From: Mizuhopecten yessoensis | Taxonomy: Eukaryota | Assembly: GCF_002113885.1 (NCBI RefSeq) | Contig: NW_018406931.1 | Span: 367,253-431,252, forward strand | Direction of reading: 5' to 3' | Length of the DNA: 64,000 nt | Shown: piece by piece, positions 7,928 through 8,260 of the stretch | Layout of the letters: the number at the start of each line of letters is the position of its first letter | Position numbering within the stretch: position 1 is the first letter of the stretch | Made by a program: the position numbers and the translations under genes | The notes under the pieces: model-generated | Seen by the model: the letters and a program-made list of their open reading frames with translations, nothing else | Told to the model about the DNA's origin: nothing | The model's database searches: none

Positions 7928-8260
7928 TTAGTGATTGATACAGTCCTGGACGTGTATCTGTAGGGTATCAACATCAGGACATGACAGGTTACACTTCGGA
8001 CAGCACAGCGACTGGTAATCTCCCTCCTCCAACTGGCATCCACATCTCTGGACGTGCCTCTGTAGGGTATCAACATCAGGACATGGCAGGTTACACGTCG
8101 GACAGTACGGCGGCTGGTAATCTCCCTCGTCCATGTGACATCTACATCTCTGGTGCCTCTGTAAGGAATAAAGATCATGCCATGCCAAGTAACACTTCGG
8201 ACAACGCATCGACTGGTATTCTCCCTCCCTCAGGTGACTTCCACCGCCCCAAGCCGTTGG
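7928..8260 (-). CDS. Terminal exon encoding three tandem NEMO/optineurin-type CCHC (UBZ) zinc fingers
   Basis: A phase-0 acceptor (tctctctgcttacAG, 8261) is followed by an open frame to TAA. The last finger, [23 protein letters not shown], closely matches the NEMO C-terminal finger ([22 protein letters not shown]). Repeat periods are 102 and 99 bp. No upstream exons were identified. Confidence 0.75.
   Translation of the reverse strand, partial: [110 protein letters not shown]

What the first reader, a model, noticed from the sequence alone, without database searches (positions are those of the whole stretch)
7928..8260. Orphan exon with a triplicated NEMO/optineurin-type ubiquitin-binding zinc finger inside the TRIM-like cluster
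Seen: a good acceptor, an open frame and three C-x2-C-x12-H-x(2-3)-C fingers. The last is highly similar to the NEMO finger; the first has H-x2-C spacing and a diverged DVDTLQ patch. Known: NEMO and OPTN end in one such finger, and TAX1BP1 has two UBZs. No NEMO/OPTN coiled-coil or UBAN exons were recognisable upstream on this strand; only the TRIM-like genes lie before DNAJB9. Inference: the exon is a shuffled copy that gave or gives a multivalent ubiquitin reader, possibly spliced onto a B-box/coiled-coil gene. Alternatively it is a dead fragment.
Basis: partly seen in the sequence, partly recalled or inferred. Interest (0 to 1): 0.75.

Follow-up and report, generated by a model that had tools for sequence, protein, structure and literature searches.

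The report
Stranded triple-finger copy of NEMO's last exon
A scallop genome holds a duplicated last exon of its NEMO immune-signalling gene, with the ubiquitin-binding zinc finger copied three times in frame. The exon is still intact, but it is attached to a broken gene fragment and appears in no annotated protein, so it is most likely a relic.

Summary
On the minus strand, 8260..7931 (stop 7930-7928) is an open exon behind a good acceptor. It encodes three NEMO-type CCHC fingers (Pfam zf_C2H2_10, E 2e-18), built from a 102-bp (34-codon) unit.

The parent was found. The genome (Mizuhopecten yessoensis) has one NEMO/optineurin-like gene, about 59 kb upstream on the same strand and 3 kb outside the window. 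It has 13 coding exons and one finger, as do NEMO proteins of four other scallop genera.

The window copy carries only NEMO's 3' end. This comprises a damaged penultimate exon, an intron swollen by a 2.3-kb satellite, and the triplicated last exon. The copy is joined at about 11564-11571 to a truncated B-box/TRIM-like copy that has four frameshifts, a stop and a lost zinc ligand. No protein among 15 billion contains the exon, and all five annotated NEMO products end in one finger.

The exon itself has no frameshift or stop, and all 12 zinc ligands remain. This is unlikely under pure drift, so it was probably translated at some time.

Finger quality falls from 44 to 26 to 14 bits. All three fingers carry Gln where human M415S impairs polyubiquitin binding.

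Two-finger and multi-finger NEMO-type tails already exist in other invertebrates.

The parts
7928..8260 (-). Terminal exon with three tandem NEMO-type CCHC zinc fingers. It has 110 codons, a phase-0 start and stop TAA at 7930-7928. In-frame ATGs lie at codon 18 (8209) and codon 43 (8134).
8132..8230 (-). Finger unit 1 ([33 protein letters not shown]). It has a 3-bp in-frame deletion giving H-x2-C. It scores 14.4 bits, below the Pfam cut-off, and is 75% nt identical to the parent finger.
8030..8131 (-). Finger unit 2 ([34 protein letters not shown]). It scores 26.1 bits, just above the cut-off, and is 83% nt identical to the parent finger.
7931..8029 (-). Finger unit 3 ([33 protein letters not shown]). 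It scores 44.3 bits and is 93% nt identical to the parent finger, with dN/dS about 0.25 from 3 synonymous and 3 nonsynonymous changes.
8261..8375 (-). Intron tail with branch-like site, pyrimidine tract and acceptor. It is homologous to the end of NEMO's last intron (84% over the 111-bp BLAST hit), and homology stops beyond it. It includes a 33-nt block (8339-8371) identical to the parent.
7771..7927 (-). 3' flank homologous to the sequence after NEMO's stop codon (about 79%, several indels). An ATTAAA lies at 7776-7771, 151 nt after the stop.
8617..10953 (.). 41-bp satellite x57 (95% matches) filling most of the copy's last intron. It is absent from the parent's intron and causes the strong GC skew of 8-12 kb.
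11472..11519 (-). Relic of NEMO's 26-codon penultimate cassette exon (SAHPYVKYPY...). It has a 3-bp deletion at the acceptor and a 1-bp deletion. A 28-bp deletion has removed the original donor. A GTAGGT at 11471 would allow a 48-nt phase 0/0 mini-exon, but this is untested.
11520..11564 (-). About 45 bp of NEMO intron preceding that exon, with its tttcag acceptor. This is the upstream end of the NEMO-derived DNA.
11571..12281 (-). Truncated TRIM-like (B-box + coiled-coil) copy, codons 1 to about 234, 89-90% nt identical to the three intact paralogues. It carries a 2-bp deletion (stop after codon 87), a 3-bp deletion, a CAG>TAG-type TAA stop, a 4-bp insertion and two 1-bp deletions. The last B-box His is changed to Gln.
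16738..18336 (-). Nearest intact intronless B-box/TRIM-like gene (532 aa), 8.5 kb upstream of the finger exon. It is the first of three tandem paralogues; the others are at 21708-23342 and 26980-28614. Context only.

Best explanation
The exon is the tail of a lineage-specific chimeric duplicate. About 2 kb of the 3' end of the scallop's single NEMO/optineurin-like gene was copied about 59 kb downstream. The copied piece comprised the end of an intron, the penultimate cassette exon, the last intron, the finger exon and about 150 bp of 3' flank. It was joined, probably by microhomology, to a truncated copy of the neighbouring B-box/TRIM-like tandem family. Inside the copied last exon, a 34-codon unit was tandemly duplicated twice in frame, giving three fingers. 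The unit runs from four codons of the pre-finger linker to the fourth zinc ligand. The complete set of ligands, the open frame and the lack of frameshifts suggest the exon was translated for part of its history (inferred). Today the upstream partner is broken: the TRIM part has frameshifts and a stop, and the penultimate-exon relic has no donor. No annotated product uses the exon. It is therefore most likely a stranded, decaying relic, not a working multivalent ubiquitin reader. If it is translated, each finger would be a beta-beta-alpha CCHC module of the NEMO UBZ type. Fingers 3 and 2 look fold-competent, and finger 1 is degenerate.
For: Only two NEMO-type fingers exist in the 988-Mb genome: this exon, and a single-finger exon at C3604:434252-434374(-), 3 kb past the window end. 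The latter lies behind UBAN exons and belongs to a 13-exon NEMO gene covering residues 1-778 of Azumapecten farreri NEMO. DNA homology between copy and parent covers 7782-8371 and 11440-11564 only. The linker between fingers (CGCQL, CRCHM) aligns to the exon's own head (GGSHL), which defines the repeat unit. TRIM homology ends at 11571-11582, and NEMO homology starts at 11564. The TRIM part has four frameshifting indels, a stop and a lost B-box His. The donor of the penultimate-exon relic is deleted. No protein of 60-192 aa matches the exon. An exhaustive search of 1.84 billion representatives gives no match to fingers 1-2. Its best hit is A. farreri NEMO over finger 3 only. All five annotated M. 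yessoensis NEMO products (XP_021357752-55, OWF48322.1) end in one finger. For past constraint, random placement of the observed substitutions keeps all ligands and avoids stops with P = 0.023 (unit 1), 0.082 (unit 2) and 0.37 (unit 3). The exon has no frameshifting indel in 333 bp, against four in the adjacent 710-bp TRIM piece. Both duplications were in frame.
Against: Absence from annotation is therefore the only expression evidence, and records of this genome may be partly withheld from the look-ups. An exon this intact beside neighbours this decayed fits ongoing selection as well as it fits a recent death. If lesions fell at the TRIM piece's rate, the chance of none in 333 bp is only about 0.1. 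dN/dS of units 1 and 2 is about 0.85-1.3. That fits drift, but also fits fast-evolving functional fingers. The counts are small, at 30 codons per unit.
Confidence: 0.6

Rival explanations
1. The exon is alive. It would be the last exon of an unannotated, scallop-specific transcript. The transcript could start at the TRIM-like fragment's promoter and splice from a phase-0 donor before the stop. Examples are TTG|GTATGT at about 12156, or a route via the 48-nt mini-exon 11519-11472. It could instead come from the intact TRIM-like gene upstream, or be an unspliced RNA translated from the ATG at 8209 into a 93-aa three-finger protein. The product would act as a multivalent polyubiquitin reader or as a decoy for NEMO-type signalling.
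For: The frame is open over 110 codons, and all 12 zinc ligands are kept despite 7-25% divergence. There are no frameshifts, although the flanks carry many indels. The acceptor, branch-like site and pyrimidine tract are 26/28 identical to the parent's. An ATTAAA lies 151 nt after the stop. All candidate junctions are phase 0. A derived ATG sits directly before finger 1.
Against: No annotated or predicted protein contains it. The only adjacent upstream coding sequence is a pseudogene. Finger 1 is below the family threshold. All three fingers carry Gln at the position equivalent to human M415, where M415S impairs polyubiquitin binding (alignment; PMC9402427). dN/dS is near 1 for units 1 and 2.
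Confidence: 0.27
2. The exon was never functional. It would be a junk mosaic made by illegitimate recombination and replication slippage, which only happens to be open.
For: Such mosaics are common, and the neighbourhood is full of repeats and gene fragments. dN/dS is near 1 for two of the three units.
Against: It needs several coincidences together: two in-frame duplications (about 1/9), all ligands kept with no stop (about 0.0007 to 0.02), and no frameshift. This scenario is counted inside the 0.6 of the best explanation as its less likely half.
Confidence: 0.2
3. It is a distal alternative last exon of the NEMO gene itself, giving a three-finger NEMO isoform.
For: It lies on the same strand, and its acceptor has the same phase 0 as NEMO's last exon. 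NEMO's penultimate exon is a phase 0/0 cassette, skipped in isoform X4.
Against: It lies 59 kb downstream. A DnaJ gene and three TRIM-like genes sit in between on the same strand. None of the four RefSeq isoforms, nor the GenBank model, uses it.
Confidence: 0.03

Closest known systems
C-terminal zinc finger (UBZ) of NEMO/IKKgamma and optineurin (Pfam PF18414 zf_C2H2_10; PDB 2jvx, 5aay, 5aaz, 2lo4)
   Same: It has the CCHC ligands, C-x2-C-x12-H-x3-C spacing and the PD.DTLQIHV helix motif. Finger 3 is 79% identical to scallop NEMO's finger and scores the same as the parent. It derives from NEMO's own last exon by duplication.
   Different: There are three copies in tandem instead of one, with no UBAN or coiled coil in front. 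Finger 1 has altered spacing and a lost motif. All three carry Gln where NEMO has Met415 and scallop NEMO has Leu, a position whose M415S change impairs polyubiquitin binding (PMC9402427).
Two-finger NEMO-like proteins of other invertebrates, for example NF-kappa-B essential modulator-like of the sponge Corticium candelabrum (XP_062520529.1), and predicted proteins P0020 and P0021
   Same: They carry more than one NEMO-type finger in tandem at the C-terminus.
   Different: Those sit on full-length NEMO-like proteins with NEMO N-terminal and UBAN domains. Their two fingers are old and distinct in sequence. Here the fingers are a recent triplication on a stranded exon.
Predicted NTPase protein with five to six NEMO-type fingers (P0030) and a six-plus-finger CPKC array (P0011)
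   Same: They show that this finger type has been shuffled onto other domains and multiplied in nature.
   Different: They are unrelated hosts and architectures of unknown organism, known only as gene predictions.
TAX1BP1 / NDP52 UBZ tails
   Same: They follow the same idea of tandem ubiquitin-binding zinc fingers at a C-terminus.
   Different: They belong to a different UBZ subfamily, and no sequence match was seen in any search here.

Membership tests
NEMO-type UBZ finger (PF18414 zf_C2H2_10) | Score above the Pfam gathering cut-off (25.6 bits) | tested here: met
   The whole exon scores 66 bits, E 2e-18. Scanned separately, finger 3 scores 44.3 and finger 2 scores 26.1 (both met). Finger 1 scores 14.4 (not met).
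NEMO-type UBZ finger (PF18414 zf_C2H2_10) | CCHC zinc ligands with C-x2-C-x12-H-x3-C spacing | tested here: met
   All 12 ligands are present. Spacing is canonical in fingers 2 and 3. Finger 1 has H-x2-C (or H-x4-C) after a 3-bp deletion.
NEMO-type UBZ finger (PF18414 zf_C2H2_10) | Beta-beta-alpha fold | tested here: inconclusive
   The AlphaFold2 model gives fingers 2 and 3 strand-strand-helix at pLDDT 80-84, and finger 1 below 50. The alignment covered only two fingers, so the low score of finger 1 is biased.
NEMO-type UBZ finger (PF18414 zf_C2H2_10) | Binds ubiquitin / K63 and M1 chains through the helix face (human V414, M415) | not testable with these tools
   Val is kept in fingers 2 and 3. 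The M415-equivalent is Gln in all three fingers and Leu in the parent. M415S impairs polyubiquitin binding in human NEMO (PMC9402427).
NEMO / optineurin gene family | UBAN (CC2-LZ) coiled coil and NEMO N-terminal domain upstream of the finger | tested here: not met
   The window holds no CC2-LZ or NEMO-domain exon. These lie only in the parent gene outside the window, which meets the criterion.
TRIM / B-box-coiled-coil family, as the possible 5' partner | Intact B-box with all zinc ligands and a continuous coiled-coil ORF | tested here: not met
   The fragment 12281-11571 has the last B-box His changed to Gln, and its Pfam match is cut at profile position 36 of 42. It has a stop after codon 87 and four frameshifting indels. 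No RING was seen in any paralogue.

The most novel reading that the evidence does not exclude
The exon is translated. The scallop would then make a small lineage-specific protein of roughly 93-170 aa that is little more than three NEMO-type fingers, perhaps led by a B-box stub. This would be a free-standing multivalent polyubiquitin reader or decoy born from exon duplication plus triplication. It could tune NEMO condensate formation and NF-kappaB signalling in a bivalve.
Probability: 0.22. Interest if true: 0.6.

Novelty: new variant of a known kind. Interest (0 to 1): 0.3.

Why it matters
The locus records how exon shuffling and in-frame tandem duplication can assemble a multivalent ubiquitin-binding module next to an expanding immune-type TRIM-like family. 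Each step is still readable in the DNA: the parent, the breakpoints, the repeat unit and the decay.

If the exon proved to be expressed, it would offer a natural 1x versus 3x test. NEMO signalling is thought to depend on multivalent ubiquitin binding (PMC9402427). If it is not expressed, it is one more decaying chimeric duplicate, and its main use is as a caution for annotation.

Tried and rejected
- **Word search.** The search with the exon gave no hit.
- **Synteny in other scallops.** I fetched the loci of the closest TRIM-like proteins of Ylistrum and Argopecten. They are only 41-44% identical, sit among unrelated genes (FANCA, TMEM70, UHRF1-like) and hold no NEMO-type finger. They are not orthologous places.
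- **NEMO N-terminal domain.** A six-frame search of the genome with PF11577 gave nothing, although the protein-level scan finds it in the A. farreri orthologue, so the exon-by-exon search was too weak.
- **A first global alignment** of the intron region failed and was redone locally.
- **Literature.** Searches for scallop NEMO fingers or two-finger invertebrate NEMO gave nothing specific.
- **Rejected: assembly artefact.** The units differ by 12-23%, and there are no N's in the window.
- **Rejected: ancestral three-finger state.** Five scallop genera have one finger, and the inter-finger linkers derive from this exon's own head.
- **Not done:** joined (spliced) protein models were not searched. 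Exons were searched one by one by reference only.

Full report
**What is there.** The finding lies on the minus strand. Behind a canonical acceptor (ctgaccttgtactctctctgcttacag|CC, AG at 8262-8261), an open frame runs from 8260 to 7931 and ends in TAA at 7930-7928. Its 110 codons read as a 10-codon head ([10 protein letters not shown]) followed by three units of 33, 34 and 33 codons. Each unit holds one C-x2-C-x12-H-x(2-3)-C finger.
- Tandem Repeats Finder reports a 102-bp unit, 2.8 copies, 82% matches.
- Pfam zf_C2H2_10 (PF18414, the NEMO/optineurin finger) matches with E 2.1e-18 in three stretches.
- The best solved structures by sequence are the human NEMO finger (5aay, 2jvx) and the optineurin finger (5aaz, 2lo4).
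- Scanned one by one, the fingers score 14.4, 26.1 and 44.3 bits against a cut-off of 25.6. The last finger is pristine, the middle one marginal and the first below threshold.

The only point to add is that the reading strand is minus.

**The parent gene.** The genome has 987.6 Mb in 82,659 contigs. Protein records show it is Mizuhopecten yessoensis. It holds only one other NEMO-type finger, at C3604:434252-434374(-), which is 3 kb beyond the right end of the window on the same strand.
- That exon encodes [43 protein letters not shown], behind an almost identical acceptor.
- UBAN (CC2-LZ) exons lie 2.7-3.4 kb upstream of it.
- Thirteen exons between 452,734 and 434,252 cover residues 1-778 of the NEMO protein of Azumapecten farreri, UXE43291.1.
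- The gene is annotated as optineurin-like / NF-kappa-B essential modulator-like, isoforms X1-X4 (XP_021357752-55), and as OWF48322.1. The products are 761-787 aa, and all five end in a single finger. Isoform X4 skips the 26-codon penultimate exon.
- NEMO proteins of Azumapecten, Argopecten, Ylistrum and Pecten also have one finger.

**What was copied.** DNA similarity between the window and the parent locus is limited to two stretches.
- The first is 7782-8371. It covers about 150 bp after the stop (about 79% identity, with indels), the exon, and about 115 bp of intron (about 84%).
- The second is about 11440-11564. It holds 45 bp of intron with its tttcag acceptor and a relic of the penultimate exon (SAHPYVKYPY...). 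The relic carries a 3-bp deletion at the acceptor and a 1-bp deletion. A 28-bp deletion has removed the original donor.
- Between the two stretches, a 41-bp satellite of 57 copies (8617-10953) fills the intron. It is absent from the parent's 1.5-kb intron and explains the strong GC skew there.

**The B-box link.** NEMO-derived DNA ends at 11564. Directly upstream of it, 11571-12347 is 89-90% identical to the 5' end of the three intact intronless B-box/TRIM-like genes of the window. It covers codons 1 to about 234.

But this TRIM-like piece is a pseudogene. Relative to its paralogues it has:
- a 2-bp deletion that brings a stop after codon 87;
- a 3-bp deletion;
- a TAA stop;
- a 4-bp insertion;
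- two 1-bp deletions.

Its last B-box histidine is now glutamine, and the Pfam B-box match is truncated. Its 5' flank is also interrupted: homology resumes only at 12535-12694. A second small B-box fragment lies further downstream at 4759-4958.

**How the triplication arose.** The inter-finger linkers (RC-GCQL and RC-RCHM) align to the exon's own head (G-GSHL) and not to the natural C-terminus (DC-INH*). The repeated unit is therefore 34 codons, running from GSHL of the head to the fourth zinc ligand. All three units share changes absent from the parent and from the other scallops, notably Leu to Gln in HV(L)DC. Units 1 and 2 share further changes (Ile to Arg, Asp to Arg, Ser to Cys in the linker). 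The order was thus: copy from NEMO, first duplication, then duplication of the internal unit.

**Dead or alive.**
- *Against a working gene.* The only adjacent upstream coding sequence is broken. The word search found no protein of 60-192 aa with this exon. The exhaustive search of 1.84 billion representatives of 15 billion proteins found nothing matching fingers 1-2, and its best hit is A. farreri NEMO over finger 3. No NEMO isoform uses it.
- *For at least past use as coding sequence.*
  - Both duplications were in frame.
  - There is no stop, and no frameshift in 333 bp. The neighbouring 710-bp TRIM piece has four frameshifts, and the flanks have many indels.
  - All 12 ligand codons are intact.
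  - When the observed number of substitutions is placed at random, the chance of keeping all ligands without a stop is 0.023 for unit 1, 0.082 for unit 2 and 0.37 for unit 3.
- *Evolutionary rates.* dN/dS is about 0.25 for unit 3 against the parent, from only 3+3 changes. It is about 0.85-1.3 for units 1 and 2.

My reading is as follows. The exon was probably translated for a time, perhaps in a TRIM-like/NEMO-tail chimera. It is now most likely stranded (0.6). A still-live unannotated transcript remains possible (about 0.27). Phase-0 routes exist on paper: a GTATGT donor at about 12156, a GTAGGT at 11471, or the ATG at 8209 that would give a 93-aa three-finger protein. None of these could be tested.

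**Expected mechanism if translated.** NEMO's finger is a CCHC beta-beta-alpha module that binds K63 and M1 chains in preference to K48 (PMC6817665). Multivalent ubiquitin binding by NEMO's UBAN and finger drives condensate formation, and M415S in the finger impairs polyubiquitin binding (PMC9402427). In the alignment to human NEMO, the M415-equivalent is Leu in scallop NEMO but Gln in all three fingers of the copy. Ubiquitin binding may therefore be weakened. The AlphaFold2 model gives fingers 2 and 3 a strand-strand-helix at pLDDT 80-84 and leaves finger 1 unmodelled. The alignment covered only two fingers, which biases that result.

**How new it is.** Of the 35 proteins that matched in the exhaustive search (E up to 0.001):
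- eleven have two NEMO-type fingers, including full-length NEMO-like proteins; one such cluster includes the sponge Corticium candelabrum protein XP_062520529.1;
- one predicted NTPase protein carries five or six fingers;
- another protein has a six-plus array.

Tandem NEMO-type fingers, and their shuffling onto other domains, are therefore not new in kind. A recent in-frame triplication on a chimeric locus is a new variant.

**Limits.**
- I searched exons one by one by reference.
- No contig looked human, and no N stretches were met.

Noticed in passing
window 398-2668 (-): Two long ORFs (376 aa endonuclease-like and 240 aa reverse-transcriptase-like) of a LINE-type retrotransposon lie downstream of the finger exon.
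   Followed up: no
window 8617-10953: A 41-bp satellite, 57 copies at 95% identity, is strongly strand-asymmetric (GC skew down to -0.5). It is found nowhere else in the window and not in the parent NEMO intron.
   Followed up: partly
window 4759-4958 (-): A second small fragment of the TRIM-like B-box region (residues 1-11 and 34-73, about 79% nt identity) lies 3 kb downstream of the finger exon. The tail of the tandem array is littered with 5' fragments.
   Followed up: partly
window 8339-8371: A 33-nt block of the intron tail is identical between the copy and NEMO's last intron, while the surrounding intron is about 80-85% identical. It could be chance or a splicing element.
   Followed up: no
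window 40825-41646 (-): 37-bp tandem repeats (about 20 copies) produce long overlapping open frames of [18 protein letters not shown]-like units in several frames.
   Followed up: partly
window 55211-57496; 47628-48378; 60642-61202: Further satellites of 68 bp (x33), 47 bp (x16) and 38 bp (x15). The last gives long Cys/Phe/Leu-rich artefactual ORFs.
   Followed up: no
G000:C3604:435917-435994 (outside the window): NEMO's 26-codon penultimate exon (PSAHPYVNYPYPPQQYPGGVEAGHGQ) is a phase 0/0 cassette skipped in RefSeq isoform X4. A Logan-derived scallop NEMO (P0051) and the Pecten maximus isoform also lack it.
   Followed up: partly
protein P0030 (806 aa, ENA-type prediction, organism unknown): A P-loop NTPase-like protein ends in five to six NEMO-type CCHC fingers. 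This is an example of the finger being shuffled onto an immune-receptor-like scaffold.
   Followed up: no
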